From: Macrostomum lignano
Taxonomy: Eukaryota
Direction: 5' to 3'
Assembly: GCA_002269645.1 (NCBI GenBank)
Contig: NIVC01002043.1
Location: 117,413-181,412, forward strand
DNA length: 64,000 bases
Part shown: positions 6,158 to 62,732 of the stretch, piece by piece
Position numbering within the stretch: the stretch's first letter is position 1
Layout of the letters: the number at the start of each line of letters is the position of its first letter
Notes under the pieces: model-generated
What the model saw: the letters and a program-made list of their open reading frames with translations, nothing else
What the model was told of the DNA's origin: nothing
Databases searched by the model: none
Position numbers and translations under genes: made by a program

Positions 6158-6158
6158 G

Positions 6159-14603: not shown

Positions 14604-16909
14604 TCAGAGCACGGACGAGTAGCGATGCGGATCTGCGTGAAGTTCAAGCCGCCTTGAAGCAGCGGCGGCTGACGCGCCAGAAGTTGACGGTGATGCAGCG
14701 GCCGTAGCCGCACTGTTCCGCCAAAGCATCTGCGTGACCAGAGCCACCCTGTAGCGCTCGTAGGCGGACACAATGGCCTCAGTCTCTTCCTTGGCTAACC
14801 TGGTAAGCAGCTCGGCTGAGCGCTCCAGCTCGCCCTGCGAGAATAGTTGCCATTGAATTTTGGCGTCGTATTCTGGCGGAGCTTTGAAGTAAACCGCCAG
14901 GAAGGACTCCAGATCTGCGGAGTTGATGTTCAGTATCTAATTGTTACAACCCTCAGCTTCCTGACCAGTAATGAAAAGAAGCCGGCATCAATGCAAAGCA
15001 GGGAACAGAGTCGGTGGGATGGAAGGGTGCAAAAATTTAGATAGAGGGCCGTCAAAACAGATTTAGGAGGGAACACAGATGCAGAGCACGCAAAAATGGA
15101 CAGAAGGGGCGCCAAAATGGATGACAAGTGGCGCCAAAAAGGGTGAAATAGGCGCCAAAATGGATGAAGTTAGCGCCAAAATGGATGAAAGAGGCGCCAA
15201 AATGGATGAAATAGGCGCCAATACAGATGAAGTTAGCGCCAAAATGGATGAGAGGCGCCAAAATGGATGAAAGAGGCGCCAAAATGGATGAAAGAGGCGC
15301 CAAAATTGATGAAATAGGCGCCAATACAGATGAAGTTAGCGCCAAAATGGATGAAAGAGGCGCCAAAACAGATGAAGTTAGCGCCAAAATGGATAAAAGA
15401 GGCGCCAAAATGGATGAAATAGGCGCCAAATGGATGCAAAGGGCGCCAAAATGAATAAGCGGTATCCTAACGCAGCAGCAGATCTTGCAGTTATAACGAA
15501 TTGAAGCATGGAAAGTGTCCTCTGAGGCTCCCGGACTCCCGGACAGTCGCCGACTGCGTCCGGCAGCTCAACCTCATGGCCAGTGGCAATACTGTCAGGC
15601 TGAAGTGGATCCCAGGGCACGCAGGGTTTCCGGGGAACGAGCTGGCAGACACCCTCGCCAAGAGGGGCGGCTCTGGCTCCGTCTTTGGCCCTGCCCCCTT
15701 GGTCCCCATGCCTTCGACAGTCATCAATCGTCTGATCGATGACTGGGCTGACTCCCTTCACAGGGACAGATGGGCGGGCACCCAAAACTGCCGACAATCT
15801 CGTGCCGCGGTTCCGTGCCCCTCTCGTAGGCTCAGAAATGTCCTTCTAAAGCAAAATTGGAAGGATTTCCGAGCCCTTGTCATGACCCTCACCGGCCATG
15901 GCAACCTCGCCAGGCACTGCTTCCTCCGAGGCGACCTCGAAAGTGAACTTTGCCCTTTTTGCGAGTAAGACAATGAAGATGCTCAGCACTTTGTCTGTCA
16001 CTGCCCTTTCTTTAACAGAGACCGGCTACGCTACCTCGGGCCGAACCCGTCCATTGACGAGGTCTGCCAGCCCGACAGCATCCCACGGCTCATCCAGTCC
16101 CTTCGGGCAACAAGACGAGCCACTTTCTTCCCCACGGAAGATCACGCTGCAGGACGGACCGCCCGGACCACCCTGACCGGCCCCACGCCTCTGCCTGTCT
16201 GCGGGCCTTCAGGGGCTAGCGGAATGGGCGACCCTCGCCTCCCCGCTGTGTCTACGGACCACCCTGCAGCTGAGTCAAAAAAGTAAGTCAAAGTTCTCTG
16301 AGGCAAACGATGATGCCTGGCTCAGAAATGCACAATACCGTCTGCAATACAAGCAACAGTCAATTACAGACACTGTCAAAGTACGACAGCAAAACAATGG
16401 AGCTTGCAATACAGTTAAAATTTGCCTGCTTAATTTCGGGAAAGCCCATTGTTATAATGCAAAAACAATGGAATGCTTTAATAAAAAAACCTTCTATTGT
16501 TATCGCACAGTGATTTTTCAGCGAGATATTTTTTCCGATTTTGCCTTGCATTAATAAAATGAATTTGTCTGACTGCTATTTATATTCTGTTAAAAGGAAA
16601 TCATTTGAATTCGATCAAAGTTATATACGTTATTTTTCGATTGAGATTTCCTTGCCAATACGGTTTCTGTTTGAAATTCGAATAGTTACTTAGCAAAAAT
16701 TAAGGTTTTAAAATGATAGGCTTTAAAAATGGCCTTTGGTATACTGCTATTATAAGTAGCATGCGGAACATTTTCTGTTCCATAAATTATTTGCTACGTC
16801 TGCTTCTGGCGACTTACAGGGGCGGAAGGGAAACAAATGACCGCATCAAGACTCAAAAAGGACAAACAGACAGAGAACTGGGCGGAAAGACAGACAGACA
16901 TACAGACAG

Positions 16910-28419: not shown

Positions 28420-28479
28420 AAAATGGGTATTTGCACCTTCCCCTCTAGGACAGCTTTGCAGCTAAGTCAAGTAAGTCAA
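28420..28479 (+). mobile_element. Diverged 3' tail of the non-LTR family seen at 16221-16295
   Basis: ...TGCAGCTAAGTCAAGTAAGTCAA matches the family tail; the upstream body is not recognisable. Confidence 0.55.
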
Positions 28480-37500: not shown

Positions 37501-40500
37501 TAGGGATTCTTTTGAAGGGGATTCTTTGCATGTGAGATGTTATGGATGGGCAATGCATTGGATGGGAAATTCTTCAGATAGGAGAATTCCTTGAATGGGG
37601 AATTCTTTGGATCCGGGATTCTATTGATAGGGGTTCTTTGGATGGGAGATTTTTTGATATGGATGGAGGTCGAGGATTTTTTGGATAGGGATGGATAGGG
37701 GGATTCTTCGGATCGGGGATTCTATCGATGGGGGTTCTTTGGATGGGGATTCTCTGCATGTAAGATTCTATGGATGGGCAATTCTTCAGATAGGAGAATT
37801 CCTTGAATGGGGAATTCTTCGGATCGGTGATTCTATCGATGGGAGGTTTTTTGGATGGCGGATTCTTTGCATGTGAGATTCTTTGCATCGTGGATTTTAT
37901 GGGTGGTGTATTCTTTGGATGAGGGATTCTTTGTATGGGAGATTCAGTTGGGTGAAATTTTATTGCGTGGGAAAACTGTGGCTGGAGTTTGGACGGAAAG
38001 CCTCAACGGGAGTTGGAATTGGCTAGCTGAGGAAATTGCTTCATTAATCTTGCTGGGGTACTTTCTATCAGGGGTTGCTTGCTATCGGAAGGACGCTTGC
38101 TCTTGGGGTATGCTTGCTCGGAAGAGAATTTTAAGATGTCAAGATTTACAAGGGGAATTATTGAGATACATGTATAAAATCTTACCTTGGGGAATTAATG
38201 ACATGTGAAGGCTTAAGTGGGACTTGCTGAGATGCCAAGGCTTGTGGGGGGAATTGCTGAGGTGTGAAGGCTTAAAAAGGAATTGCTGAGGTCTTAAGTC
38301 TCGGGGAGGGGAATCGCTAAGATGTCAAGACTTACTGGAGGAATTACTGAGATATGAAGGCTTACTGGGAGAATTACTGAGATATCAAGGCTTGGGGAGG
38401 GGAATTACTGAGATGTCAAGGCTTTGGACGGGGAGAAATTGGTAACATGTCAAGGCTTGCGCCGGAATTGCTTAGATGTCAATGCTTGGGGAAAATTTCT
38501 GAGGTGTCGAGGCTTGGGGAAATTGCTGAGATGTTAAGTCTTGGGGGAATTCTATGGATTGATGATTCTTTGGATGAGGGATGCTTCTAATGGATAAATT
38601 TGAATAGGTGATTCATTGGGCAATTTCTTCGGTGGGGCATTGTTTCGATTGAGGGTTATTTGAACGGGGGTTCTTTAGATGAGGGGATTCTGGATTCTTT
38701 GGCCAATTATGCTTTTGATGGGGGATTATTTAAGGATGTGAATTATTTAGAGGGGGGATTTTTTGGAGAAGGAATTTTTTGGATATGGATGGTTAAGGTG
38801 ATTATTTAGATAGGAATGGATGGGGAAATTCTTTGGATAGGGATGAATAGGAGGATTCTTGGGATAGGGATGGATGGGGGATTGTTTAGATAGGGATGGA
38901 TGGGCGATTCTTTGGATAGGGATGGGTGGGGGATTCTTTGGATAGAGGGTTTCTGTGGATGAGGGATTTCTTGAATAAGGGATTTATTGGACGGGGAATT
39001 CTTCAGATGGGAGGATTCCTTGAATGGGGAATTCTTCGGATCGGGGATTCTATCAATGGGATGGGATGGGGATGGGACGGGAAGGATTGGTATTCTTTGC
39101 ATGTGAGATTCTATGGATGGGCGATTCATTAAATAGGGAATTCTACAGATAGAGGATTCCTTGAATGGGGAATTCTTCGGATCGGGGATTCTGTCGATGG
39201 GAGGTTCTTTGTATGGGATTCTTTGGATGAGGGTTTTTTGCACGTGAGATTATTTGCATCAGGGACTTTATGGATTAGAGATTCTTTGGATGGGGGGGGG
39301 GTTCAGTTGGGTGAATTTCTTTTGCGTGGGAAAACTTTGGTAGGAGTTCTGACGGAAAGCCCCAACGGGGGTTGGAATTGGCTAGTCCTATATACTAAAA
39401 ATGAGTTGTTTGTTTGTTTGTTTGTACGCAATCGATTAGAGAAAAAATGGCTGGACCGATTTTCATGAGACTTGCACTGTTCGATCAGAAATTTTCCCGT
39501 GACGGTACATGCATCGTGGCTAAGAAATTGCTCGATGCTAAAGGCATTAAATATTCGAAAAACATGCTTTTTTGCAAAGGTCAAGCAAACTTTTCGACTT
39601 GAAATGCATTGTAAGAATGCTAGAGAAAAAACTGACTGGTTGAATTCTGATTCTGAAATAGATTGCATCATCACTGAATTGTAACTCCGACTTGTTGAAT
39701 TGAAAATGCAGTGTGGAAGCGTAGCACCAGACTTGATTTAAATTGCGTAACCATATTGTTAACTGATACTGACTGACTGAGAAACTGATTATGTCATAAC
39801 TGCTTCGTGTGATTTACTCTATGCTTGGATTTTAAAGTGTTGAATTATATAAATGCAAAATTTGATGTTATCAAAACGATGAGAGCTAGCCTAGAGGTGA
39901 ACAAACTGAACTGCTAAATGCAGCGACGGTGGTTCGAATTTTCATAGAGTGGATTTTTTTTAATTAAAGCTTTTCAACGTCAGGAAAACTAAAAGACTTT
40001 TTAAAAAGAAGCGTCCTGTAAAAATCATGGAAGCGTCATTTACAAAATCATAGAAGCATCATTTAAAAAATCATAGAAGCGTCATGTAAAAAATCATAGA
40101 AGCGTCATCTAAACAATCATCGAAGCGTCATGTAAACAATCATAGAAGCGTCATTTAAAAAATTTAAAAAAAGAGTGAATTGCGTCACTTGGGGCTGAGC
40201 TCTGAGAAAAATTGGCTACTTGTTTCAAGGCGCAAACTATAAAATGTTGCCGAGTGCATTTAACAGAGTAGCTAATCCCTCGCAAAAAATTCTCAATAGC
40301 TAAAAGTTATAAACTTGGAGACCGTGGACACTGACAGACTTACCCGAGTAACATTTTGGCGTAAGATCGGCGACGGGATAACCAACGAGACACTGTAGCG
40401 CCGCGACGGCCTGACCCTTCCAAGCCAACTCTGTTGCTTCGTTATTGACTCCAGCTTGGTTCCATCTCTCTATTTTGGTCTATTCAAAAAGTGTCTTTTG

Positions 40501-40844
40501 TTTAACAATCAAGTGACTGATTTGTATACAGACCGGTACTTTCGGTCATTGAACAATCACGCAATCACCGCCCAATGCAGGCCCAGTTCAACGATACGGT
40601 GTTCTTCGAGTTGAAGATTCTCCGTCGGATGTCGCAGCCCGGCCAGCCGGCCAAGCTGAACATCTACACCGGCCGGGCCAACCTGGCCAGCCAGATCGAC
40701 TCCGAGCGGGACAATTTCGGCCGCGAGGTGCACATCAGCATGGATTTGGACGAGCGCCTGTCGTCCACGTGCGACTTTGAGTTCGCTGGGCAGCAATTTT
40801 TCAGCCTGACGGCCAGGAAGATCGAGGCTTACTACTCCACCTGA
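34555..40844 (+). CDS. Uncharacterised 162-aa protein; exons 34555-34779 and 40581-40844
   Basis: Two GC-rich segments with host-like codon usage. CAG|GTGAAA donor and TGCAG| acceptor are both phase 0, giving KMQ|AQFNDTVFFELKI. No family recognised; an upstream exon is possible (acceptor near 34537). Confidence 0.7.
35456..38026 (+). mobile_element. Non-autonomous Helitron-like unit 1
   Basis: A|TCCAATATACTAAAA 5' end (duplicated at 35518); 3' end with hairpin-like CCTCAACGGGAGTTGG then CTAG (38023-38026); internal 28-bp and G-rich repeats. Confidence 0.6.
38110..39385 (+). mobile_element. Tandem duplicate of the 3' part of the Helitron-like unit
   Basis: Parallels 36590-38026 block by block; ends CCAACGGGGGTTGG-AATTGG-CTAG. 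Confidence 0.65.
39386..39990 (+). mobile_element. 5' part of a second Helitron-like unit, abutting the previous CTAG
   Basis: TCCTATATACTAAAA, (GTTT)n, GGCTGGACCGATTTTCATGA; 39730-39950 resembles 36235-36470. Confidence 0.65.
40020..40165. repeat. 21-bp minisatellite AAAATCATAGAAGCGTCATGT
   Basis: About 7 copies. Confidence 0.88.
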
Positions 40845-41122
40845 CCCGACTAAATTGATTTCTCTGATTCTCATTTAATAAAATTATCGAAAAAAAGTTT
40901 GACCGCGGTTGAAAATGTGTGTTGGAGCAAAAACACTTGTCTAATCCCAACCAAAGTGAGAAAAAAGCTGACATGTCATAAGCTTCAAACCTATTCGATT
41001 TTAAAAGGATTTCAGAGAGAACAAATATTTTTATGGAGTGACTGCTGTAATAATAACTCCACAAGGAAGGAGATCAATGGATACTTGCTAAATATTGTCC
41101 GTTGGCAATCAAGGACGTCCTT

Positions 41123-41410
41123 ACAGCCACTGTAATTGCGCGTGTACGGCATGCACAGCCACTGTAATTGCGTGTGTACGGCATGTACAGCCACTGTAAT
41201 TGCGTGTGTACGGCATGTACAGCCACTGTAATTGCGTGTGTACGGCATGTACAGCCACTGTAATTGCGTGTGTACGGCATGTACAGCCACTGTAATTGCG
41301 TGTGTACGGCATGTACAGCCACTGTAATTGCGTGTGTACGGCATGTACAGCCACTGTAATTGCGTGTGTACGGCATGCACAGCCACTGTAATTGCGTGTG
41401 TACGGCATGC
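41123..41410. repeat. 32-bp minisatellite TACAGCCACTGTAATTGCGTGTGTACGGCATG
   Basis: About 9 near-identical copies. Confidence 0.96.
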
Positions 41411-41719
41411 AAGCGCTGAGATTGTGGATGCATGTAGGGAGACTTTCGAACTCCCCCCCCCGACTCACACCACCGTAGATTTCTGCTCAGAGCTGCTAAC
41501 TCCCTGTCACAGAAAGCAGAACTGGATCTTAAGCCGAGCATTTTTATGCAATTGTATCGAGTAGTGTGGAATCAAGCGACGTGTTGTGCAGTCGGCAACT
41601 GGACGGGCCACAACATCCACGCCGAGTCGTATTGCCCATAGCCGGTGTAGGAGGTGCTGCTTCTGACGCTGCAGGCACCCTACAAGCGAGGACAGGCTTG
41701 CTCAACTGTCTAACAAGCT

Positions 41720-42005
41720 CGTGTCACTGTCGAACATGTTTGTGTCACTACTGCTGAACGTGTTTGTGTCACTGTCGAACGTGTTTGTGTCACTGTCGAA
41801 CATGTTTGTGTCACTACTGCCGAACGTGTTTGTGTCACTGCCGAACATGTTTGTGTCACTGCCGAACATGTTTGTGTCACTGCCGAACATGTTTGTGTCA
41901 CTGCCGAACGAGTTTGTCACTGCCGAACATGTTTGTGTCACTGTCGAACATGTTTGTGTCACTGCCGAACATGTTTGTGTCACTGCCGAACGTGTTTGTG
42001 TCACT
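41720..42005. repeat. 21-bp minisatellite GTCACTGCCGAACATGTTTGT
   Basis: About 13 copies. Confidence 0.94.
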
Positions 42006-42699
42006 TCCGTGGCCAACATCCTATTGACTTTGCCATGAATGAATTATAATTCTTTCATGCATAAATGTAATCAAGTTTTTGTGTAACGAATTAAAAAGGA
42101 CTCAAGGACTCAGACCAGAGTCCGTTAGATTCGATTTAATTATTCTGTTCATTCGATAATTAAATCTGGAGTAAAAATGCTGATATGACTAAAGTCAATT
42201 AGAATTCATGAAGTTGCGACACAGAACAGATAAGCACTAATTAGCATGGCTTCAAGAGATATGATGAAGGATTTGTATGAATGTTGGCTATATAAAAATC
42301 ATTACAGAGTCGGTGCCACCCGTCTGCATCATAAAACACAATTAAAAAATAATTTTTGCCAATCATTAAAGAAGACGACGCCACACGGTCGCATAAGCAA
42401 TAAAAATAATTTACAGCAAATCGCGTACAGTTAGAGGCAGGGTTGACACCTGAACCAATGATTAAATCCTAGGTAACAGGTTCGCCTAGCTACTTATTAG
42501 GTTATGCTCTAACTGAGCCAATTTCTACTGAAAATTGCTCGCTATTGCAAGCATTGAATTGCGATTTAAGCAAAATTTTGCATATAGAACTCTAGAAGTC
42601 CCACGTCAGATACATGCATTCGGGTCTAGTTGCGCGAAAATGGGTATAAGGGTTCAGTGACCCATTTTTCCTATAGGGATCCTCCTAGACATGGGGCTG

Positions 42700-43350
42700 C
42701 ATGTGACCAGTGGAATGCTTGGGAATAGGGGTAGAGGTGACCAGTTGAATGCTTGGGAATAGGGGTAGAGGTGACCAGTGGAATGCTTGGGAATGGGGGT
42801 AGAGGTGACCAGTGGAATGCTTGGGAATAGGGGTAGAGGTGACCAGTGGAATGCTTGGGAATAGGGGTAGAGGTGACCAGTGGAATGCTTGGGAATAGGG
42901 GTAGAGGTGACCAGTGGATTGCTTGGGAATAGGGGTAGAGGTGACCAGTGGAATGCTTCCAGGGAATAGGGGTAGAGGTGACCAGTGGATTGTTTGGGAA
43001 TAGGGGTAGAGGTGACCAGTGGAATGCTTCCAGGGAATAGGGGTAGAGGTGACCAGTGGAATGCTTGGGAATAGGGGTAGAGGTGACCAGTGGAATGCTT
43101 GGGAATAGGGGTAGAGGTGACCAGTGGATTGTTTGGGAATAGGGGTAGAGGTGACCAGTGGAATGCTTCCAGGGAATAGGGGTAGAGGTGACCAGTGGAA
43201 TGCTTGGGAATAGGGGTAGAGGTGACCAGTGGATTGTTTGGGAATAGGGGTAGAGGTGACTAGTGGAATGCTTCCAGGGAATAGGGGTAGAGGTGACCAG
43301 TGGAATGCTTGGGAATAGAGGTAGAGGTGACCAGTGGATTGCTTGGGAAT
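42700..43350. repeat. 34/37-bp minisatellite GAATGCTTGGGAATAGGGGTAGAGGTGACCAGTG
   Basis: About 18 copies in two length variants. Confidence 0.95.
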
Positions 43351-43452
43351 AAAGTATATAGGTGGCCAGTTTAAAAAATACTGGACCCGCATTAGCTATG
43401 CTATGGACTTAAGCAATATTTTCCTGTTTCATTAATTACAATAAATCTTATT

Positions 43453-46400
43453 TTAACGTCCATTCTCTATGCTGGCGACGCGTTGAACGAGGCTGTCTAA
43501 TTGGCGAGACAACTTTGACACGCCTCTCAAGGTCCAACCAATTTGATGCTCCAGCGCCGGCCGCTTGAGGAACAGCGGGTCATCTACGAATGAAGACTCT
43601 GCCGCTGTCGCGCTGCGGGTTCCAGAAGTGGGCGAGGAGAGGCTTGGGTTGTAAATGCTCAAAAATTTACTGCACTGGATTAATTTATTCTACGATTGAA
43701 TGACGCAGCCCGATGAAAACGATATGGAGACCAAGAAGCGTTCCAGAGTCACTAAAAATAGTAAAGAAATGACTCTAGGCGACTCTAAAACGACGACATG
43801 TCACTGTACAAATCGTCTAAGAGTCAAGTTGAGGCGTTTTATTGTCAGCAACTCTGAAACGACTCTTGGGTGAGGCAAGGAACTCTGGGGCGCTTCTATG
43901 AAGGCTTTCAGGACAGATAGTCGTATCTGAGGCCTGCCAGAGTCGCCAAAGAATCACTGAGTTGCGTCTAAAGCGCATCTGCGTCACTTTATGAATTAGA
44001 ATCGCATTTCGCATTTATAACAACTCTATTTAGACTACTTGAGTTAGTAGAATGTTAAACACTAACACAACGACTCTTGGATGGCTTTTCTTGACTCTTT
44101 TACGATTCTGCAACTCAAGTGATGCGCTCGTGACTCAACAGTCGCCTCTCCGTCGCGTTACAGTCGTTTGAGTCGTCACAAGAGTCGCTAGAGTCACTAG
44201 ACAGTTGTTTGTAATGACTTTAAGCGATTCTTGTCACATGACGTTTTCGACGGGCCCTACCAGACAAAAAATAATGCTTACATTTGCGTCGCCGCGAGAG
44301 CCGCGACCTGCCTTTGCAGCAATATTACCCGGTAAGAGAGAGTGACAGCAGATATTGTGCATAGAAGGAGGCTGCAACGGTAATTGTTTACATAGGTTAA
44401 AATGGTTCTTTTTTATTTTCCTCCTTTATAACTGTACAAATCAAGGTCACTAAAACTCCACTTTCAACAAATTCAAGATGGCTAAGAGAACGGTGGTTTT
44501 TGGTTCTGAATATGCTGGAGGGACAGTGGCTTTGGTCTTGGATATCCTGGAGGGACAGTGGCTTTGGTCTTGAATATCCTGGAGGGACAGTGGCTTTGGT
44601 CCTGGATATCCTGGAGGGACAGTGGCTTTGGTCCTGGATATCCTGGAGGGACAGTGGCTTTGGTCTTGAATATCCTGGAGGGACAGTGGCTTTGGTCTTG
44701 GATATCCTGGAGGGACAGTGGCTTTGGTCTTGGATATCCTGGAGGGACAGTGGCTTTGGTCTTGAATATCCTGGAGGGACAGTGGCTTTGGTCCTGGATA
44801 TCCTGGAGGGACAGTGGCTTTGGTCCTGGATATCCTGGAGGGACAGTGGCTTTGGTCCTGGATATCCTGGAGGGACAGTGGCTTTGGTCCTGGATATCCT
44901 GGAAGGACAGTGGCTTTGGTCCTGGATATCCTGGAGGGACAGTGGCTTTGGTCTTGGATATCCTGGAGGGACAGTGGCTTTGGTCTTGAATATCCTGGAG
45001 GGACAGTGGCTTTGGTCTTGGATATCCTGGAGGGACAGTGGCTTTGGTCCTGGATATCCTGGAGGGACAGTGGCTTTGGTCTTGAATATCCTGGAGGGAC
45101 AGTGGCTTTGGTCCTGGATATCCCGGAGGGACAGTGGCTTTGGTCCTGGATATCCCGGAGGGACAGTGGCTTTGGTCTTGAATATCCTGGAGGGACAGTG
45201 GCTTTGGTCCTGGATATCCTGGAGGGAGTGGCTTTGGTCCTGGATATCCCGGAGGGACAGTGGCTTTGGTCCTGGATATCCTGGAGGGACAGTGGCTTTG
45301 GTCCTGGATATCCTGGAGGGACAGTGGCTTTGGTCGTGGATTGATAGTTCCTCCAGCTATAGCGCCAGCGTACGAGAGCGGGATAGCAGAAGAAGACAAC
45401 AACTCACAGCATCAGAGAGACAACTGCCCCCGCTGACACCCAAGTGAGTCGCGGTGCGTATCGAACAGGAGTAGCCAGTTTTGCCAGCCAGCGGTGGCAG
45501 ACACTGTTCAATCTTCCAGTCTCCATAGCTGGCTGACTTTGACTTACTTGACTTAGCTGCAGGGCGGTCCGAAGACGCAGCGGGGAGGCGAGCGTCGCCC
45601 ATTCCATAGCTGGCTGATTTCTGTTCGTCTCTAACTGCCGGTCCTCTTGCTGTTCCTCTTGCTGCTCCTCTTGCTGCTCCTCTTGCTCCTCTTCCTCCTC
45701 CTCCTCCTCCACATTGCCATCGAGCTCTTCTCCGTCGTCCTCTATTCGATCGCCGACGTCCTGTTGTAACTGCAGCTGCTGAACAACTGGGCTGGCGTCG
45801 AATCCCGAGTCACCTGAGTCGTCCGTTGAAGCTTCGACCTGACTGACGACGGCCTGTTGATTGGATTGAGAGCGGGATGTGGAATATTTCTTCAGCTTTA
45901 ACCGGGTTAGTTCCTTAGCTTCTTAAGGAAAATTATGTTTACAGCCGGCTATCTAGCCAAAGATATCAGAATCCCCCTATGAGCCTTGACATTTCAGTAG
46001 TAAGCCTTGACTTCTCAGCAGTTCCCACATGAGTCTTGACATCTTGGTAATCCCCCATGAGCCTTGACATATCAGCAATCCCCATGAGCCTTGACATATC
46101 AGCAATCCCCCATGAGCCTTGACATATCAGCAATCCCCCATGAGCCTTGACATATCAGCAATCCCCCATGAGCCTTGACATATCAGCAATCCCCCATGAG
46201 CCTTGACATATCAGCAATCCCCCATGAGCCTTGACATATCAGCAATCCCCCATGAGCCTTGACATATCAGCAATCCCCCATGAGCCTTGACATATCAGCA
46301 ATCCCCCATGAGCCTTGACATATCAGCAATCCCCCATGAGCCTTGACATATCAGCAATCCCCCATGAGCCTTGACATATCAGCAATCCCCCATGAGCCTT

Positions 46401-49400
46401 GACATATCAGCAATCCCCCATGAGCCTTGACATATCAGCAATCCCCCATGAGCCTTGACATATCAGCAATCCCCCATGAGCCTTGACATATCAGCAATCC
46501 CCCATGAGCCTTGACATATCAGCAATCCCCCATGAGCCTTGACATATCAGCAATCCCCCATGAGCCTTGACATATCAGCAATCCCCCATGAGCCTTGACA
46601 TATCAGCAATCCCCCATGAGCCTTGACATATCAGCAATCCCCCATGAGCCTTGACATATCAGCAATCCCCCATGAGCCTTGACATATCAGCAATCCCCCA
46701 TGAGCCTTGACATATCAGCAATCCCCATGAGCCTTGACATATCAGCAATCCCCCATGAGCCTTGACATATCAGCAATCCCCCATGAGCCTTGACATATCA
46801 GCAATCCCCCATGAGCCTTGACATATCAGCAATCCCCCATGAGCCTTGACATATCAGCAATCCCCCATGAGCCTTGACATATCAGCAATCCCCCATGAGC
46901 CTTGACATATCAGCAATCCCCCATGAGCCTTGACATATCAGCAATCCCCCATGAGCCTTGACATATCAGCAATCCCCCATGAGCCTTGACATATCAGCAA
47001 TCCCCCATGAGCCTTGACATATCAGCAATCCCCCATGAGCCTTGACATATCAGCAATCCCCCATGAGCCTTGACATATCAGCAATCCCCCATGAGCCTTG
47101 ACATATCAGCAATCCCCCATGAGCCTTGAAAAACCAAGCCCAACCAAACCTTAAACCTTGGCATTTCAGCCACCTGTACGAGCTAAGTAAGTGCGTAATT
47201 AATAACTCATACTAATGAGAGTGGCATTTGACTGAAGTTACTAAGATAACCACTTCTTTTATTGCTTCACATCAGTTTAAATGTAAGGCAGAAGCAGAAA
47301 TCTGGAAACAAATACTCGTAGAATAGGAAAGAAGAGAAGAGAGACGGCCACAAACTCAATGGAGTCTGAATTTCTATTCTTAGAGCGAATCACGCCACCA
47401 TTTTGCTTACGGGGAGTGGCGAGCAAAAGGCGTGACTGCGAACTTAATAGCATAAACTTAGAAAGAGCCCTGTCAGTAGAATTAAATATGAAACTCTAAC
47501 TGCTTGTCAAACTTTGCTCATCTATTTTCAACTCGAAGATCTGAGGCGCATTTTAGCCTATCTGAGCTACAGTCTAGCCTCAATCTGAGCTACAGTCTAG
47601 CCTCAATCTGAGCTACAGTCTAGCCTCAATCTGAGCTACAGTCTAGCCTCAATCTGAGCTACAGTCTAGCCTCAATCTGAGCTACAGTCTAGCCTCAATC
47701 TGAGCTACAGTCTAGCCTCAATCTGAGCTACAGTCTAGCCTCAATCTGAGCTACAGTCTAGCCCCAATCTGAGCTACAGTCTAGCCTCAATCTGAGCTAC
47801 AGTCTAGCCTCAATCTGAGCTACAGTCTAGCCTCAATCTGAGCTACAGTCTAGCCTCAATCTGAGCTACAGTCTAGCCTCAATCTGAGCTACAGTCTAGC
47901 CTCAATCTGAGCTACAGTCTAGCCTCAATCTGAGCTACAGTCTAGCCTCAATCTGAGCTACAGTCTAGCCTCAATCTGAGCTACAGTCTAGCCTCAATCT
48001 GAGCTACAGTCTAGCCTCAATCTGAGCTACAGTCTAGCCTCAATCTGAGCTACAGTCTAGCCTCAATCTGAGCTACAGTCTAGCCTCAATCTGAGCTACA
48101 GTCTAGCCTCAATCTGAGCTACAGTCTAGCCTCAATCTGAGCTACAGTCTAGCCTCAATCTGAGCTACAGTCTAGCCTCAATCTGAGCTACAGTCTAGCC
48201 TCAATCTGAGCTACAGTCTAGCCTCAATCTGAGCTACAGTCTAGCCTCAATCTGAGCTACAGTCTAGCCTCAATCTGAGCTACAGTCTAGCCTCAATCTG
48301 AGCTACAGTCTAGCCTCAATCTGAGCTACAGTCTAGCCTCAATTTGAGCTACAGTCTAGCCTCAATCTGAGCTACAGTCTAGCCTCAATCTGAGCTACAG
48401 TCTAGCCTCAATCTGAGCTACAGTCTAGCCTCAATCTGAGCTACAGTCTAGCCTCAATCTGAGCTACAGTCTAGCCTCAATCTGAGCTACAGTCTAGCCT
48501 CAATCTGAGCTACAGTCTAGCCTCAATCTGAGCTACAGTCTAGCCTCAATCTGAGCTACAGTCTAGCCTCAATCTGAGCTACAGTCTAGCCTCAATCTGA
48601 GCTACAGTCTAGCCTCAATCTGAGCTACAGTCTAGCCTCAATCTGAGCTACAGTCTAGCCTCAATCTGAGCTACAGTCTAGCCTCAATCTGAGCTACAGT
48701 CTAGCCTCAATCTGAGCTACAGTCTAGCCTCAATCTGAGCTACAGTCTAGCCTCAATTTGAGCAAACCAAAGCAACCTAAAAGATGCGTCCTCACCAGAG
48801 CAGCGTGGGATTCTACAATTGCGCTGGCACTGTTCGCTGCATCAGCTGAGGCATCCCAGGCGGACTGCAGCTGCTGCAGCAGTCGATCTCGGGAGCCAAT
48901 GTTTGAGAAGGTTACCTAAAAAATATGACAAAAGAAGCATTTTTTAATATTAAATAGTTAATGCAGATTGGCAAAGCTTATGACTCAAGTTATTTTTCTG
49001 ATGCCCAAAACATAGTGACTTAGAGCTTTATGACATAGATCCTTATGACTCAGATCCTTATGAACCAGATCCATATGACCCAGATCCTTATGACCCGGAT
49101 CCTTATGACCCAGATCCTTATGACCCAGATCCTTATGACCCAGATTCTTATGACCCAGATCCTTATGACTCAGATCCTTATCATCCAGATCCTTATGACC
49201 TAGATTCAAATGACCTAGATTCTTATGACCCAGATCCTTATGACCCAGATCCTTATGACCCAGATTCTTATGACCCAGATCCTTATGACTCAGATCCTTA
49301 TCATCCAGATCCTTATGACCCAGATCCTTATCATCCAGATCCTTATGACCTAGATTCAAATGACCTAGATTCTTATGACCCAGATCCTTATGACCCAGAT

Positions 49401-52400
49401 CCTTATGACCCAGATCCTTATGACCCAGATCGTTATGACCCAGATCCTTATGATCCAGATCCTTATGACCCAGATCCTTATCATCCAGATCCTTATGACC
49501 CAGATCCTTATCATCCAGATCCTTATGACCCAGATCCTTATCATCCAGATCCTTATGACCTAGATTCAAATGACCTAGATTCTTATGACCCAGATCCTTA
49601 TGACCCAGATCCTTATGACCCAGATCCTTATGACCCAGATCGTTATGACCCAGATCCTTATGATCCAGATCCTTATGACTCAGATCCTTATCATCCAGAT
49701 CCTTATGACCCAGATCCTTATCATCCAGATCCTTGTGACCTAGATTCAAATGACCTAGATTCTTATGACCCAGATCCTTATGACCCAGATCCTTATAACC
49801 CAGATCCTTATGACCCAGATCCTTATGACCCAGATCCTTATGACCCAGATTCTTATGATCCAGATCCTTATGACCCAGATCCTTGTGACCCAGATCCTTA
49901 TCATCCAGATCTTTATGACCTAGATTCAAATGACCTAGATTCTTATGACCCAGATCCTTAGGACCCAGATCCTTATGACCCAGATTCTTATGACCCAGAT
50001 CCTTATGACTCAGATCCTTATCATCCAGATCCTTATGACCCAGATCCTTATCATCCAGATCCTTATGACCTAGATTCAAATGACCTAGATCCTTATGACC
50101 CAGATCCTTATGACCCAGATCCTTATGACCCAGATCCTTATGACCCAGATCCTTATGACCCAGATCCTTATGACCCAGATCCTTATGACCCAGATTCTTA
50201 TGACCCAGATCCTTATGACTCAGATCCTTATCATCCAGATCCTTATGACCCAGATCCTTATCATCCAGATCCTTATGACCTAGATTCAAATGACCTAGAT
50301 CCTTATGACCCAGATCCTTATGACCCAGATCCTTATGACCCAGATCCTTATGACCCAGATCCTTATGACCCAGATTCTTATGACCCAGATCCTTATGACC
50401 CAGATCCTTATCATCCAGATCCTTATGACCCAGATCCTTATCATCCAGATCCTTATGACCCAGATCCTTATCATCCAGATCCTTATGACCTAGATTCAAA
50501 TGACCTAGATTCTTATGACCCAGATCCTTATGACCCAGATCCTTATGACCCAGATCCTTATGACCCAGATCGTTATGACCCAGATCCTTATGATCCAGAT
50601 CCTTATGACTCAGATCCTTATCATCCAGATCCTTATGACCCAGATCCTTATCATCCAGATCCTTGTGACCTAGATTCAAATGACCTAGATTCTTATGACC
50701 CAGATCCTTATGACCCAGATCCTTATGACCCAGATCCTTATGACCCAGATCCTTATGACCCAGATCCTTATGACCCAGATTCTTATGATCCAGATCCTTA
50801 TGACCCAGATCCTTGTGACCCAGATCCTTATCATCCAGATCTTTATGACCTAGATTCAAATGACCTAGATTCTTATGACCCAGATCCTTAGGACCCAGAT
50901 CCTTATGACCCAGATTCTTATGACCCAGATCCTTATGACTCAGATCCTTATCATCCAGATCCTTATGACCCAGATCCTTATCATCCAGATCCTTATGACC
51001 TAGATTCAAATGACCTAGATCCTTATGACCCAGATCCTTATGACCCAGATCCTTATGACCCAGATCCTTATGACCCAGATCCTTATGACCCAGATCCTTA
51101 TGACCCAGATTCTTATGACCCAGATCCTTATGACCCAGATCCTTATCATCCAGATCCTTATGACCCAGATCCTTATCATCCAGATCCTTATGACCCAGAT
51201 CCTTATCATCCAGATCCTTATGACCCAGATCCTTATGACCCAGATCGTTATGACCCAGATCCTTATGATCCAGATCCTTATGACTCAGATCCTTATCATC
51301 CAGATCCTTATGACCCAGATCCTTATGATCCAGATCCTTATGACTCAGATCCTTATCATCCAGATCCTTATGACCCAGATCCTTATCATCCAGATCCTTG
51401 TGACCTAGATTCAAATGACCTAGATTCTTATGACCCAGATCCTTATGACCCAGATCCTTATGACCCAGATCCTTATGACCCAGATTCTTATGACCCAGAT
51501 CCTTATGACCCAGATCCTTATCATCCAGATCCTTATGACCCAGATCCTTATCATCCAGATCCTTATGACCTAGATTCAAATGACCTAGATTCTTATGACC
51601 CAGATCCTTATGACCCAGATCCTTATGACCCAGATCCTTATGACCCAGATCGTTATGACCCAGATCCTTATGATCCAGATCCTTATGACTCAGATCCTTA
51701 TCATCCAGATCCTTATGACCCAGATCCTTATCATCCAGATCCTTGTGACCTAGATTCAAATGACCTAGATTCTTATGACCCAGATCCTTATGACCCAGAT
51801 CCTTATGACCCAGATCCTTATGACCCAGATCCTTATGACCCAGATCCTTATGACCCAGATCCTTATGATCCAGATCCTTATGACCCAGATCCTTGTGACC
51901 CAGATCCTTATCATCCAGATCTTTATGACCTAGATTCAAATGACCTAGATTCTTATGACCCAGATCCTTATGACCCAGATCCTTATGACCCAAATGCAAA
52001 ACTCGTAATGCACTGTAAGCCTCTCACCGCCCGCTGAGCCGTGGCGATTCTGATCCCGGTGGGAAACAGGGAGAAAACCTTCTCCTTGCAGATGGAGACG
52101 ACGTCAGAGAATTTTAGTTTCACCTGATATCGTAATTGTGAATCAGTTTGCACTTTTGTCAGCAATCAATCATGTGTGGATGCCAAGGTAATGGTTCTGC
52201 AGCAAAACTTACCTCCGGGGTGAGGCTGGGCAGTGCCGGCCAGAAGCAGATGTGCCGGCGAGTGATCACGATGGTGCCGCGTGCGGGCACGTCCGATACG
52301 CAAAATGCGGGCATGGCTTCAAGTTTGGGGTGGTGGGGTGGAGATTTTTATCCTCATATACTTGCCGAAATCTGCTTTTTCTGATCATTCAATTATCGAT

Positions 52401-53097
52401 CATATGATTTCATTTCTTCTTCCACATTACTTCTATCCTAATCCTCCAAAGACTTCTATCCTAATCCTCCAAAGACTTCTATCCTAATCCTCCAAAGACT
52501 TCTATCCTAATCCTCCAAAGCTGGACTTCTAATCTAATCCTCCAAGGACTTCTAACCTAATCCTCCAAAGATTTCTATCCTAATCCTCCAAGGACTTTTA
52601 TCCTAATCCGGCAAGGACTTCTAACCTAATCCTCCAAAGATTTCTATCCTAATCCTCCAATGACTTCTATCTTAATCCTCCAAAGACTTCTATCCTAATC
52701 CTCCAAGCTGGACTTCTAACCTAATCCTCCAATGACTTCTATCCTAATCCTCCAAGGACTTCTAACCTAATCCTCCAATGACTTCTATCCTAATCCTCCA
52801 AGCTGGACTTCTAACCTAATCCTCCAAGGACTTCTAACCTAATCCTCAAAGGACTTCTATCCTAATCCTTCAAGGACTTCTATCCTAATCCTCCAAGGAC
52901 TTCTATCCTAATCCTCCAAGGACTTCTAACCTAATCCTAATTGTCTCACTTGTCACAATGCTGTCCCTGTGCGACAGTCGCAGCCTTCTAGCCAGCTTGT
53001 TCAGCTTCTGACTGATGCTTCTTCGTCGAGTCCCAGAGGCGGCGGCGACCGGCTGCGCCTTTTCTATCGTTTGCGGATCCTGTTGTGACCGACGCAT
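43453..53097 (-). CDS. GRAM-domain protein with acidic linker, C-terminal TM helix and short coiled coil (GRAMD2/3-like architecture), 372 aa; exons 53097-52950, 52316-52213, 52123-52028, 48915-48796, 45853-45408, 43657-43453
   Basis: GRAM-like text RGTIVITRRHICFW..VKLKFSDVVSICKEKVFSLFPTGIRIAT..VTFSNIGSRDRLLQQLQSAW; hydrophobic LTWVSAGAVVSLML|IY. All five introns GT-AG with matching phases; total 1119 nt. Confidence 0.85.
43709..44254 (+). mobile_element. CCC...GGG MITE (CACTA/CMC-like), long copy, in GRAM gene intron 5
   Basis: CCCGATGAAAAC ... GTTTTCGACGGG; homologous to 25865-26289; flanks CAG/CCC give no TSD. Confidence 0.75.
44505..45335. repeat. 32-bp minisatellite GGATATCCTGGAGGGACAGTGGCTTTGGTCCT in GRAM gene intron 5
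   Basis: About 26 copies. Confidence 0.97.
45537..45602 (-). mobile_element. 66-bp 3' tail of the non-LTR family inserted in GRAM gene exon 5
   Basis: About 90% identical by eye to 16221-16295; 15-bp TSD TCCATAGCTGGCTGA at 45522-45536 and 45603-45617. Confidence 0.92.
45975..47128. repeat. 28-bp minisatellite GAGCCTTGACATATCAGCAATCCCCCAT in GRAM gene intron 4
   Basis: About 37 identical copies plus degenerate leading copies. Confidence 0.98.
47560..48763. repeat. 23-bp minisatellite TCTGAGCTACAGTCTAGCCTCAA in GRAM gene intron 4
   Basis: About 52 almost identical copies. Confidence 0.98.
49025..51992. repeat. 15-bp minisatellite CAGATCCTTATGACC with higher-order variant pattern, GRAM gene intron 3
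   Basis: About 198 units with no indels seen. Confidence 0.98.
52427..52938. repeat. 23-bp minisatellite TTCTATCCTAATCCTCCAAGGAC in GRAM gene intron 1
   Basis: About 22 copies. Confidence 0.95.
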
Positions 53098-53275
53098 TGC
53101 TGCTGCTGTGTATATTGTTCTGAGAGGGGTTGGTCAGTGGCTTGCTTCAATTTATAGACTGCAAAGATAGCCTTGCAAACCAGTATTACTCATGGTGAGA
53201 ACGGGGAGTGCGATGCGTGCAAACATGAGTTGATGCATGCGTACACTGTGTGAGCTATGTATATGAACTCTGTGT

Positions 53276-53276
<1 letters not shown>

Positions 53277-53321
<45 letters not shown>
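53277..53321. repeat. (CT)n microsatellite
   Basis: Direct reading. Confidence 0.95.
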
Positions 53322-53326
<5 letters not shown>

Positions 53327-53769
53327 AATTGGCCTCCATATACCCTATGAAGTGGGGGCGGGGCCCCATTCGCGACCCTTTTTTTTGGGGGGGCTCGTTT
53401 TCTGGTTCATAGGCGGCCCTCTGCGCAATTCAATTGAAATATTGAGAAGAAACAGGCTATAACTTGTGAGTTCTGTTTGACTTTATACTGTGGAACTATT
53501 CTGGATGTGCAGCGAAGGCACAGCTCATTCCTGTTGCGTCATTCTCTCATTGACGAGCATGATCTAGATCGTACTCACCACTAAGCTGCATGAATTTATC
53601 TGCATGAATACACCAGTGAGTCTCATGCAAGTATAAATGCATTTTACATAAGCAACTATTTGCGTTTGCATGCGTGGGTGACGCAATTATTTGTTTAAAT
53701 AACCAGGGGCTCGGAGCTAATGCATATTGGTATGCGCACTGACTCGGCAGCTCAAGCATCATTTAGCTA

Positions 53770-54320
53770 CTCCTCAGCAACCGATAACTATAATATACTC
53801 GCAACAGATGACTGTATACTCAGCAACAGATAACAGTATACTCAGCAACAGATAACAGTATACTCAGCAACAGATAACAGTATACTCAGCAACAGATAAC
53901 AGTATACTCAGCATCAGATAACAGTATACTCAGCATCAGATAACAGTATACTCAGCAACAGATAACAGTATACTCAGCATCAGATAACAGTATACTCAGC
54001 AACAGATAACAGTATACTCAGCAACAGATAACAGTATACTCAGCATCAGATAACAGTATACTCAGCATCAGATAACAGTATACTCAGCAACAGATAACAG
54101 TATACTCAGCATCAGATAACAGTATACTCAGCAACAGATAACAGTATACTCAGCAACAGATAACAGTATACTCAGCAACAGATAACTATGCTCAGCAACA
54201 GATAACAGTATACTCAGCAACAGATAACAGTATACTCAGCAACAGATAACAGTATACTCAGCAACAGATAACTATGCTCAGCAACAGATAACAGTATACT
54301 CAGCAACCGATAACTATGCT
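53770..54320. repeat. 22-bp minisatellite CAGCAACAGATAACAGTATACT
   Basis: About 24 copies. Confidence 0.96.
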
Positions 54321-55392: not shown

Positions 55393-55923
55393 ATGTTTCA
55401 CTGGGAATCAATACTAGAGGAAGATATTAGCGGTTTAGAAATGAATGAGATTGAGTTTCTGCAGCAACTTGGACATCGTGATCCTGGTGAAGAAGTTAGT
55501 CAGTGGACCGGTGTGACCGTAAGACAGCAGGAGTTGATTGACGCAGAAATGTCCAATCCAAGCATTCTGAATAATGCCGAGCTTCTGCGGGAACTGACGG
55601 AAGAAGAGGAAGCTGCTGTGCAAGACGTCGAAGAGGCTGCAAAACGCAAATCGACCACGGATCAAACCGCTCTCCATGTGAAACGCTTCAAAAAATATCT
55701 GGTGGAACAGAAACTGCCGGACAACATCAAAACAATGCCGATCCGCTATCTTTGTGCCTATATGCGGCTGTGGTTTGTGTCACTGAGGACTCAGGAAGGC
55801 AAGCCATACGCTGTCCGAAGTCTGGTGTGCTTCAGGGCGTCTATTCATCGGTACGTGCTGGAGACAAGGAACGTGCGAATTGAGGTAACTATTGATGAAC
55901 TCTCCAGCCACATATCATTTTGA
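55393..55923 (+). mobile_element. Crypton-like ORF (N-terminal core-binding domain of the tyrosine-recombinase / ZMYM-KCTD1-QRICH1 type), catalytic part missing
   Basis: KSTTDQTALHVKRFKKYL..YMRLWFVSLRTQEGKPYAVRSLVCFRASIHRYVL fits the T..T.W....F..F....R..DG..Y...SL...A..RYL pattern; flanked by 16-bp inverted repeats at 55293-55308 and 56049-56064. Confidence 0.7.
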
Positions 55924-62228: not shown

Positions 62229-62732
62229 ATGCCGCTGCTGCTGCTGCTGTTTCTGCAGCTCTGCGGCAGGTGCAACGGCGCGTCAAAGTGCTTAGCCTGC
62301 GACAACTATTTCGAGTTGAACTTGCGCAACCTGGATACCACTAGCAAGTCGGAGATTCTGAAGCGCTACTGCGGAATAGAAGCTCGTATCACGGATAGCA
62401 ACCAGGCCGACTGCGGTGGTGCCGACTATGACGGCTGCGTGAAGATTGTCACCCGCTCCTACCGGTATCACATCGACCGAGAGGGCGTCGGCATGCGGGC
62501 TCCGGAGACTCTCATTTCAACTGTGGTCACTCGCGACTGCGCCGAGATTCCCAAAGCAATGGGCGTCGGGTGTCACATGCTGTACGGCGCTGGAAGCACT
62601 ACAGAGATGTGCTACTGCAAAGGAGACTATTGCAATGCGGCGGGGCGACTGCAACTGCAGCATGGCTTGTTGATGGGCCACCTCTTGCTTCTGCTGCTGT
62701 CTGTGGTTGCTCTTCGGGTTACGGGTCTTTAA
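62229..62732 (+). CDS. Ly6/uPAR three-finger (quiver/sleepless-like) GPI-type protein, 167 aa, single coding exon
   Basis: Signal peptide MPLLLLLFLQLC.., KCLAC..YC..DC..GCVK..RDC..GC..MCYCKGDYCN, hydrophobic tail LLLLLLSVVALRV. Confidence 0.88.
   Translation: MPLLLLLFLQLCGRCNGASKCLACDNYFELNLRNLDTTSKSEILKRYCGIEARITDSNQADCGGADYDGCVKIVTRSYRYHIDREGVGMRAPETLISTVVTRDCAEIPKAMGVGCHMLYGAGSTTEMCYCKGDYCNAAGRLQLQHGLLMGHLLLLLLSVVALRVTGL

What the first reader, a model, noticed from the sequence alone, without database searches (positions are those of the whole stretch)
45522..45617. In-frame 81-bp LINE-tail insertion in a coding exon that also imports a consensus splice donor upstream of the TM helix
Seen: 66 bp of the LINE 3' tail plus a 15-bp TSD make exactly 27 codons with no stop, adding [27 protein letters not shown] to the acidic linker. 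The tail contains CAA|GTAAGT (GT at 45547-45546), a better consensus match than the native CT|GTGAGT. Using it (phase 0) would skip the TM helix and frameshift exon 6 to HLQPKPLLAHFWNPQRDSGRVFIRR-stop. Inference: a retrotransposon tail acting as a portable donor could convert a membrane-anchored GRAM protein into a soluble isoform. The same tail occurs at 16221-16295 and 28420-28479, so the effect may recur genome-wide.
Basis: partly seen in the sequence, partly recalled or inferred. Interest (0 to 1): 0.7.

Follow-up and report, generated by a model that had tools for sequence, protein, structure and literature searches.

The report
In-frame LINE tail in flatworm exon
A 66-base end piece of a jumping gene (LINE) landed in frame inside a coding exon of a GRAM-domain gene of the flatworm Macrostomum, adding 27 amino acids to a floppy acidic linker; a related copy of the gene lacks it, and the idea that it supplies a working splice site remains untested.

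Summary
On the minus strand, two exact 15-bp repeats (45603-45617 and 45522-45536) flank 66 bp (45537-45602). Those 66 bp are 93% identical to the 3' end of an RNase H-bearing LINE fragment at 15471-16295. The 81 added bases lie in exon 5 of a six-exon, GT-AG, 392-codon gene with a Pfam GRAM domain. They add 27 stop-free codons.

New evidence: the only database relative is Macrostomum lignano protein A0A1I8H0P1, a spliced exon 5-6 fragment, 95% identical over the C-terminus. It lacks exactly these 27 residues (NRNQPA-TETGRL). This is the empty site, seen at protein level. M. lignano is a neopolyploid with three paralogous subgenomes that differ mainly by indels.

The imported CAA|GTAAGT does outscore the native GCT|GTGAGT. 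Its use is unsupported:
- A comparably good older cryptic donor in the same exon is read through in the relative.
- The "TM helix" is a marginal 16-18-residue hydrophobic stretch.
- The two other tail copies in the window are not known to lie sense within any gene.

Verdict: a tolerated 5'-truncated LINE insertion in a disordered linker of a redundant gene. This is a known kind and of modest interest.

The parts
45603..45617 (-). 5' copy of the target-site duplication, TCAGCCAGCTATGGA. The last 3 nt (GGA) are also homologous to the LINE, a junction microhomology.
45537..45602 (-). 66-bp 5'-truncated 3' tail of a non-LTR retrotransposon, in sense orientation to the gene. It ends in two copies of a TAAGTCAAG-like 9-mer.
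   Evidence: 64 of 69 identities plus a 4-nt gap to 16221-16295
45522..45536 (-). 3' copy of the target-site duplication
45542..45550 (-). Imported donor-like 9-mer CAA|GTAAGT (GT at 45547-45546, phase 0). Its use is not shown.
   Evidence: PWM 5.35 bits, 8 of 9 U1 matches, the top GT of 29 in and around exon 5
45408..45913 (-). Exon 5 of the GRAM-domain gene: acidic E/Q-rich linker, the insertion, and the start of the hydrophobic segment (45448-45408). The native donor is GCT|GTGAGT, phase 2.
   Evidence: The exon 5-6 junction agrees with P0001.
45808..45816 (-). Pre-existing cryptic donor-like site CAG|GTGACT (G at 45813), read through in the related protein
43453..43657 (-). Exon 6 including the stop codon. 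The acceptor implied by P0001 (cccgcag|CGCGAC) gives a start at 43612. The two are 45 nt apart and in frame.
52950..53097 (-). Exon 1 (start codon at 53097)
52213..52316 (-). Exon 2 (GRAM domain, part 1)
52028..52123 (-). Exon 3 (GRAM domain, part 2)
48796..48915 (-). Exon 4 (GRAM domain, part 3)
15471..16295 (+). 5'-truncated LINE fragment with an RNase H domain, a zinc-knuckle-like motif and the reference copy of the tail at 16221-16295. It shows what the 66 bp derive from.
28420..28479 (+). Third, more divergent tail copy. It is a related subfamily or a tail-sharing short element, lying upstream of the 5'-nucleotidase-family gene.

Best explanation
A non-LTR retrotransposon of an RNase H-bearing lineage integrated by target-primed reverse transcription into exon 5 of a GRAM-domain gene. 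The host is Macrostomum lignano or a very close relative. Reverse transcription stopped after about 66-69 nt. The cDNA end joined at a 3-nt GGA microhomology, and a 15-bp target-site duplication formed.

The net gain is 81 nt, and the tail has no stop in the host frame, so the reading frame survived. The 27 added residues sit in a long, strongly acidic, low-complexity linker between the GRAM domain and the C-terminal hydrophobic segment. This linker also varies by other indels between gene copies.

The genome carries three paralogous subgenomes, so a change to one copy is buffered. The insertion is therefore most likely a tolerated, near-neutral, copy-specific indel that arose after the copies diverged.

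The GTAAGT in the tail belongs to the element's own terminal 9-mer repeat. In the host exon it is most likely a silent or minor cryptic donor.

Shown: the insertion anatomy, its homology to the LINE end, frame preservation, the GRAM domain, and an empty site in a relative. Inferred: the TPRT mechanism, neutrality, non-use of the donor, and the timing relative to the duplication.
For: Insertion anatomy:
- The two 15-bp repeats are exact and occur only twice in the window.
- The 66 bp are 93% identical to a LINE 3' terminus and stop at the same end.
- The reference copy is preceded by an RNase_H Pfam hit and a zinc-knuckle-like motif.

Gene and frame:
- The six-exon GT-AG model has an intact 392-codon ORF and a Pfam GRAM hit of 36.4 bits, above the 23.6 cut-off.
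- The linker has net charge -23 over about 100 residues. The inserted peptide has near-neutral hydropathy and net charge +1.

Empty site:
- M. lignano A0A1I8H0P1 (P0001) has a gap of exactly 27 residues at the site. It is 95% identical over the C-terminal 104 aa.
- P0001 also differs in the same linker by an 8-residue E/Q indel and a roughly 25-residue frame-shifted stretch.

Genome background:
- M. lignano has three paralogous subgenomes with 1.1% SNPs in CDS. Indels account for 5.5% of CDS differences (PMC10733133).
- Tandem repeats make up 15% of the genome, and genes average about 5 introns (PMC5730564). Both fit this window.

Donor:
- A cryptic donor of similar strength in the same exon is read through in P0001.
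Against: - No transcript of this copy could be examined. Both retention of the insertion in mRNA and non-use of the imported donor are inferred.
- The imported donor really is the best-scoring GT in the exon, 3.6 bits above a weak native donor. Some use is therefore plausible.
- P0001 is a predicted protein from an earlier assembly, with odd frameshifts. It could be the same locus in another assembly or haplotype rather than a paralogue. The insertion would then be polymorphic, not copy-specific.
- The RT and endonuclease domains of the source element are not in the window. Its LINE clade is unresolved.
Confidence: 0.75

Rival explanations
1. The LINE tail acts as a portable 5' splice site. 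Splicing from 45548 (phase 0) to exon 6 skips the hydrophobic segment and shifts the frame, giving a C-terminally truncated soluble GRAM isoform of about 288-303 aa. The new stop lies in the last exon, so the transcript should escape nonsense-mediated decay.
For: - CAA|GTAAGT scores 5.35 bits and matches 8 of 9 U1 positions. The native donor scores 1.79 bits and matches 5 of 9. The imported site is the top GT of 29 in the exon.
- The predicted frameshift and stop are correct for both possible acceptors.
- The GTAAGT motif is conserved in all three tail copies.
- LINE-borne splice sites are known to be used in mammals (PMC2176070, abstract seen in the listing).
Against: - There is no transcript evidence.
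- U1 duplex energy does not favour the imported site: -5.6 versus -5.5 kcal/mol.
- An equally good older cryptic site (4.50 bits, -8.1 kcal/mol) in the same exon is read through in the related protein.
- That protein joins the native donor to exon 6.
- The PWM came from human frequencies recalled from memory, not from Macrostomum.
- The claim of a membrane-to-soluble switch also needs the hydrophobic segment to be a real TM helix, and it scores below threshold.
Confidence: 0.12
2. This gene copy is a redundant, decaying paralogue in a neopolyploid genome. The insertion is one lesion in a copy that is no longer expressed or selected, so neither the added peptide nor the donor matters.
For: - There are three paralogous subgenomes, with many indels even in CDS (PMC10733133).
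- This exact protein is absent from the protein collection.
- Only one related M. lignano protein was found.
- The native donor of exon 5 is weak.
Against: - The ORF is intact over six exons and 392 codons, and every intron is GT-AG.
- The GRAM domain passes Pfam's threshold.
- Both copies of the target-site duplication are identical, and the insertion is in frame and stop-free.
- Absence from the collection is weak evidence, because the word-indexed searches demonstrably missed P0001.
Confidence: 0.1
3. The 81 bp are ancestral to all copies, and the relative (P0001) lost them by recombination or slippage between the two 15-bp direct repeats.
For: Deletion between direct repeats would leave exactly the empty-site sequence seen in P0001. 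I know from the literature that precise loss of retroelements through their flanking duplications has been reported as a rare event; I did not look up a paper for this.
Against: - Such events are rare compared with insertion.
- The duplication copies are still identical.
- M. lignano paralogues diverged recently, about 1-2%, which fits a young copy-specific insertion.
Confidence: 0.03

Closest known systems
5'-truncated LINE insertions made by target-primed reverse transcription, including exonic L1 insertions catalogued in human and mouse (reviews PMC4859970 and PMC6466679, titles and abstracts seen in the listing)
   Same: - A flanking target-site duplication of 12-15 bp.
- The insertion ends at the element's 3' terminus.
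- Extreme 5' truncation, with microhomology at the 5' junction.
- Sense insertion into a coding exon.
   Different: - Most catalogued exonic insertions are long and disrupt the gene. This one is only 66 bp, in frame and stop-free, so the ORF survives.
- The element ends in a short 9-mer repeat rather than poly(A).
- The element carries RNase H.
- The host is a neopolyploid flatworm.
LINE-borne splice sites and L1 exonization or domestication (PMC2176070; PMC12129022; PMC10901741; abstracts seen in the listing)
   Same: A retroelement sequence carries a consensus splice signal into a host gene, and part of the element is read as host protein.
   Different: - In those cases, use of the sites is shown by transcripts, and the elements are usually intronic and recruited as new exons.
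- Here the element landed in an existing exon, is read through by default, and use of its donor is untested.
'Stringent' LINEs whose conserved 3' tail, a stem-loop plus short terminal repeats, is what the reverse transcriptase recognises. The eel UnaL2/UnaSINE1 pair is an example. This comparison comes from my own knowledge; no paper was looked up.
   Same: - The tail ends in two copies of a 9-mer (TAAGTCAAG) rather than poly(A).
- A GGGCGA-NNN-UCGCCU hairpin is kept in two copies, with a change in the loop.
- A divergent element at 28420-28479 shares only the terminal ~25 nt.
   Different: - The hairpin folds no better than shuffled sequence (z = 0.0 and -0.5).
- Recognition by the reverse transcriptase is not tested.
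- The clade is unknown.
GRAMD2/GRAMD1(Aster)/Lam-type GRAM-domain proteins anchored in the ER by a C-terminal transmembrane helix
   Same: - An N-terminal GRAM domain: Pfam 36.4 bits, and a weak PDB match to the Lam6 GRAM domain, E = 0.02.
- A long linker.
- One hydrophobic segment near the C-terminus.
   Different: - There is no VASt/StART-like domain.
- The hydrophobic segment is only 16-18 residues and falls below the usual hydropathy threshold.
- About 50-65 further residues follow it.
- No orthology to any named GRAMD protein was shown.

Membership tests
Non-LTR retrotransposon (LINE) insertion by TPRT | Direct target-site duplication immediately flanking the insert | tested here: met
   An exact 15-bp repeat occurs only twice in 64 kb, against 0.01 expected by chance.
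Non-LTR retrotransposon (LINE) insertion by TPRT | The insert is collinear with, and ends at, the 3' terminus of a longer element copy, with variable 5' truncation | tested here: met
   64 of 69 identities to 16221-16295, with the same ...GTAAGTCAAAG end. Homology stops at the GGA of the duplication on the 5' side.
Non-LTR retrotransposon (LINE) insertion by TPRT | The source element encodes reverse transcriptase and an endonuclease and has no LTRs | tested here: inconclusive
   Only the C-terminal part is in the window: RNase_H at 31.8 bits and a zinc-knuckle-like motif. The RT and EN regions are missing, because the copy is truncated at ~15471 by a minisatellite.
Non-LTR retrotransposon (LINE) insertion by TPRT | An empty (pre-integration) site exists in a paralogue, allele or relative | tested here: met
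   Met at protein level only. M. lignano A0A1I8H0P1 reads NRNQPATETGRL, with a gap of exactly 27 residues. No DNA of that locus could be fetched.
GRAM domain proteins (Pfam PF02893) | The sequence matches the GRAM profile above the curated threshold | tested here: met
   36.4 bits against a cut-off of 23.6, aa 40-137 across exons 1-4.
Membrane-anchored GRAM proteins (GRAMD2/GRAMD1/Lam type) | A C-terminal transmembrane helix | tested here: inconclusive
   The best 19-residue Kyte-Doolittle window scores 1.31-1.43, below 1.6. The hydrophobic run is 16-18 residues. No topology predictor or experiment was available.
Functional 5' splice site | Consensus or U1-complementary sequence at a GT | tested here: met
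   CAA|GTAAGT matches 8 of 9 positions and scores 5.35 bits. The PWM values were recalled from memory for human.
Functional 5' splice site | Exon-exon junctions in transcripts that start at this GT | not testable with these tools
   No RNA-seq or transcript collection for this organism could be reached. The only related protein uses the native donor.
Classical TE exonization (an intronic TE recruited as a new cassette exon) | The TE lies in an intron and supplies the splice sites that create a new exon | tested here: not met
   The tail lies inside a pre-existing exon that is open across 172 codons, and it is read through.

The most novel reading that the evidence does not exclude
The terminal 9-mer repeat of this Macrostomum LINE family (TAAGTCAAG, which contains AAG|GTAAGT-like donors) is a mobile source of working 5' splice sites. 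In this GRAM gene it would produce a truncated isoform without its anchor, from one of three paralogous copies. That would be an early step of sub- or neofunctionalisation after whole-genome duplication. Sense-oriented tails elsewhere in the genome would do the same.
Probability: 0.1. Interest if true: 0.5.

Novelty: new member of a known kind. Interest (0 to 1): 0.25.

Why it matters
As it stands, this is a tidy, fully dissectable example of a retroelement fragment becoming protein-coding sequence directly. It has a target-site duplication, a junction microhomology, an in-frame stop-free tail and an empty site in a relative. It happened in a genome whose three young subgenomes diverge mostly by indels, and it shows one concrete source of those coding indels.

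It would matter more if the imported donor were used. A LINE family whose terminal repeat is itself a consensus donor could then spread alternative 3' truncations through genes. In a neopolyploid, such changes can persist in one copy. That idea can be tested directly with existing M. lignano RNA-seq.

Tried and rejected
1. Word-indexed protein searches with the whole 392-aa protein and with a version lacking the E-rich run found nothing. A short C-terminal query later found P0001 at E = 7e-57.

2. Exact-sequence look-ups were run for the full protein, the empty-allele protein, the alternative-donor isoform, the 102-aa genomic ORF, the MMACHC-like ORF and the LINE ORF. None is in the collection.

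Exon 5 alone was accepted and gave the key hit. The second hit, P0002, is a repetitive 903-aa protein matching 28 residues and is unrelated.

4. No contig is on record for P0001, so no DNA-level view of the empty site was possible.

5. A scan of metagenome contigs with the terminal 22-mer of the tail gave three hits. None has homology upstream of the 22-mer. One lies in what reads as an open, bacterial-looking coding stretch, and two are copies of an unrelated repeat in WLWD01 contigs. They were rejected as unrelated matches to a low-complexity 9-mer repeat.

6. A stem-loop in the tail is present in two copies but folds no better than shuffled sequence. It is kept only as a remark.

7. I considered that the insert region might be intronic or spliced out. 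I rejected this because the 172-codon open frame, the phase agreement with exons 4 and 6, and P0001 all read through the site.
Full report
**1. What is in the sequence**

The features below are on the minus strand.
- The 15-mer TCAGCCAGCTATGGA occurs at 45603-45617 and again at 45522-45536, and nowhere else in the window even with one mismatch. Shuffled sequence gives 0.01 matches on average.
- The 66 bp between the two copies (45537-45602) is unique in the window at up to 3 mismatches.
- These 66 bp align to 16221-16295 on the plus strand with 64 of 69 identities and one 4-nt gap. Both sequences end in ...GTAAGTCAAAG.
- A third copy at 28420-28479 (+) shares the last ~25 nt nearly exactly. 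Upstream it is much more diverged, with 47 of 56 aligned positions identical and several gaps.
- On the 5' side, homology between the exon and the 16-kb copy extends 3 nt (GGA) into the direct repeat. This is a junction microhomology. The duplication is therefore 12-15 bp and the tail 66-69 bp.
- The net gain is 81 nt under either reading.

**2. What the 66 bp come from**

- The 16-kb copy is the end of a longer fragment at 15471-16295 (+).
- Its reading frame contains [24 protein letters not shown], a Pfam RNase_H hit of 31.8 bits against a cut-off of 25.8.
- A CPFC...HFVCHC zinc-knuckle-like motif follows, and the frame stays open almost to the element's end.
- The reverse transcriptase part is missing, because a minisatellite replaces it upstream of ~15471.
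- Four features identify a non-LTR retrotransposon: RNase H followed by a zinc knuckle with no LTR, a defined 3' terminus shared by three copies, variable 5' truncation, and a 15-bp duplication at the exon copy.
- The clade is not resolved.
- The terminus consists of two copies of a 9-mer (TAAGTCAAG TAAGTCAAAG). The GTAAGT is therefore part of the element's own terminal repeat.
- A GGGCGA-NNN-UCGCCU hairpin is kept in two copies. It folds no better than shuffled sequence, with z = 0.0 and -0.5.

**3. The host gene**

Open stretches and splice signals on the minus strand give a six-exon model. The exons are 53097-52950, 52316-52213, 52123-52028, 48915-48796, 45913-45408 and 43657-43453.
- All introns are GT-AG, the phases agree, and the product is 392 aa.
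- Residues 40-137 match Pfam GRAM at 36.4 bits, against a cut-off of 23.6.
- There is a weak PDB match to the Lam6 GRAM domain, E = 0.02.
- After the GRAM domain comes a linker of about 100 residues with net charge -23.
- The 27 inserted residues [27 protein letters not shown] occupy aa 260-286.
- A hydrophobic stretch LTWVSAGAVVSLML... follows and spans the exon 5/6 junction. A tail of 50-65 residues ends the protein.
- The tail has no stop in two of its three frames. Because 81 is divisible by 3, the downstream frame is kept.
- Every intron is packed with minisatellites.

**4. Organism and empty site**

- The first two word-indexed protein searches found nothing. Exact look-ups of six candidate products also failed.
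- A full HMMER scan with exon 5 alone found P0001 at E = 4e-26.
- P0001 is UniRef100_A0A1I8H0P1 of Macrostomum lignano.
- It is a 161-aa fragment that runs from the linker through the exon 5/6 junction to the same C-terminus ...VASIENGR.
- It is 95% identical to the window over the last 104 residues.
- In the alignment P0001 reads ...ETNRNQPATETGRL..., with a gap of exactly 27 residues where the window has the insertion plus one copy of the duplication.
- This is the empty site, seen at protein level. No DNA for P0001 could be fetched.

P0001 differs from the window in three further ways:
- an 8-residue E/Q indel in the linker;
- a stretch of about 25 residues read in another frame of the same DNA;
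- a different exon 6 acceptor. P0001 joins ...SLML to ATAAESS..., which corresponds to cccgcag|CGCGAC (exon start 43612). The two sites are 45 nt apart and in frame.

**5. Genome background**

- M. lignano is a neopolyploid whose assembly holds three paralogous subgenomes.
- They differ by 2.2% SNPs overall and 1.1% in CDS. When indel length is counted, the difference reaches 36% overall and 5.5% in CDS (PMC10733133).
- Tandem and simple repeats make up 15% of the genome. Genes average 5 introns of about 1.4 kb (PMC5730564).
- The window fits this description.
- The 5 substitutions in 104 residues between P0001 and the window are consistent with a paralogous copy. An allele, or the same locus in the earlier and more error-prone assembly, cannot be excluded.
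- Retroelement insertions are not normally excised precisely, so the empty state is most likely ancestral and the insertion specific to this copy.

**6. The splice-donor idea**

I scored all 29 GT sites in and just beyond exon 5. I used a donor matrix recalled from memory for human, a count of matches to CAG|GTAAGT, and ViennaRNA duplex energy against the 5' end of U1.

| Site | Sequence | PWM (bits) | U1 matches | Duplex energy (kcal/mol) |
|---|---|---|---|---|
| Imported donor (GT at 45547-45546) | CAA\|GTAAGT | 5.35 | 8 of 9 | -5.6 |
| Native donor (exon end 45408) | GCT\|GTGAGT | 1.79 | 5 of 9 | -5.5 |
| Cryptic site (G at 45813) | CAG\|GTGACT | 4.50 | 7 of 9 | -8.1 |

- The gene's other four donors score between 3.55 and 7.65 bits.
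- The pre-existing cryptic site at 45813 is encoded as DSGDSG and is read through in P0001. A good consensus inside this exon is therefore not sufficient for use.
The stop would lie in the last exon.
- The logic of the model is sound, but nothing shows that this splicing happens.

**7. The "TM helix"**

Both fall below the customary 1.6.
- The hydrophobic run is 16-18 residues long.
- Membrane anchoring is plausible by analogy with GRAMD2-type proteins, but it is not established.

**8. Recurrence**

- The other two tail copies in the window are on the plus strand. The neighbouring ORFs are all on the minus strand: MMACHC-like with its M at 10115, the WW-domain ORFs at 16846-18731, and the 5'-nucleotidase-family exons at 22546-25638.
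- I built no full gene models for these neighbours. On the ORF evidence, neither tail copy is known to lie sense within a gene, so the window gives no support for recurrent donor use.
- A metagenome scan with the terminal 22-mer returned only unrelated sequences.

**9. Comparison with what is known**

- Exonic LINE insertions, LINE-borne splice sites and L1-derived coding exons are all documented (PMC4859970, PMC6466679, PMC2176070, PMC12129022, PMC10901741; listing).
- This case is a new instance in a flatworm. It is notable for being very short, in frame, and paired with an empty relative.
- It is not classical exonization, because the element landed in an existing exon.

**10. Verdict**

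- The insertion interpretation is supported and strengthened by the empty site.
- The portable-donor and soluble-isoform inference is untested and somewhat weakened.
- Novelty: a new member of a known kind. Interest: 0.25.

Noticed in passing
window 1367-5646 (+): An apparently intact Penelope-like retroelement. It has a 669-aa ORF with no Pfam hit, then a 746-aa ORF with RVT_1 (36.8 bits) and a GIY-YIG motif (20.2 bits, just under the cut-off). TCTA-type microsatellite arrays flank it at 61-909 and 5849-6802.
   Followed up: partly
window 40000-54000, e.g. 49028-51992, 47560-48763, 46003-47129, 44499-45341, 42703-43351, 52429-52938: Every intron of the GRAM gene is largely filled by a different minisatellite, with periods of 15-34 bp and up to 198 copies. 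Several create long spurious ORFs, for example the 1004-aa 'GHKDL' ORF. This fits the 15% tandem-repeat content reported for M. lignano.
   Followed up: partly
window 45700-45800 (-) versus P0001: The M. lignano relative reads about 25 residues (QLLSSCSYNRTTTEKSSMAI) in a different frame of the same DNA and skips an 18-nt stretch that contains a stop. Either that copy carries two compensating frameshifts, or the earlier assembly or annotation has indel errors at a C-run.
   Followed up: partly
window 43612 and 43657 (-): There are two in-frame candidate acceptors for the last exon, 45 nt apart. The related protein uses the downstream one. The 15 residues IYNPSLSSPTSGTRS may therefore be intronic or alternatively included.
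   Followed up: partly
window 15969-16283 (+): In the 16-kb LINE copy the ORF frame after the zinc knuckle stays open for 105 codons. Its first stop is the TAA inside the terminal GTAAGT, about 12 nt from the element's end, which suggests almost no 3' UTR. The exon copy differs by a 4-nt indel there, so this is uncertain.
   Followed up: no
window 45551-45562 (-): The tail also carries an acceptor-like CCGCCCTGCAG| just upstream of the donor-like motif. M. lignano uses spliced-leader trans-splicing, so an internal acceptor could in principle matter. There is no evidence that it does.
   Followed up: no
window 61674-62732 (+), 55393-55923 (+), 9336-10115 (-), 17949-18731 (-), 22546-25638 (-): Other genes in the window:
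- a DUF5746/Quiver Ly-6-like protein (155 bits);
- a 176-aa ORF with no Pfam hit;
- an MMACHC-like first exon whose ORF runs on into a proline-rich minisatellite;
- a WW-domain protein;
- a 5'-nucleotidase-family (NT5DC-like) gene in two large exons.

   Followed up: partly
tool behaviour, versus 33: the search for homologous proteins returned no hit for queries that contained a 28-residue exact match to P0001. Negative results from long or low-complexity queries in this tool should not be trusted.
   Followed up: yes
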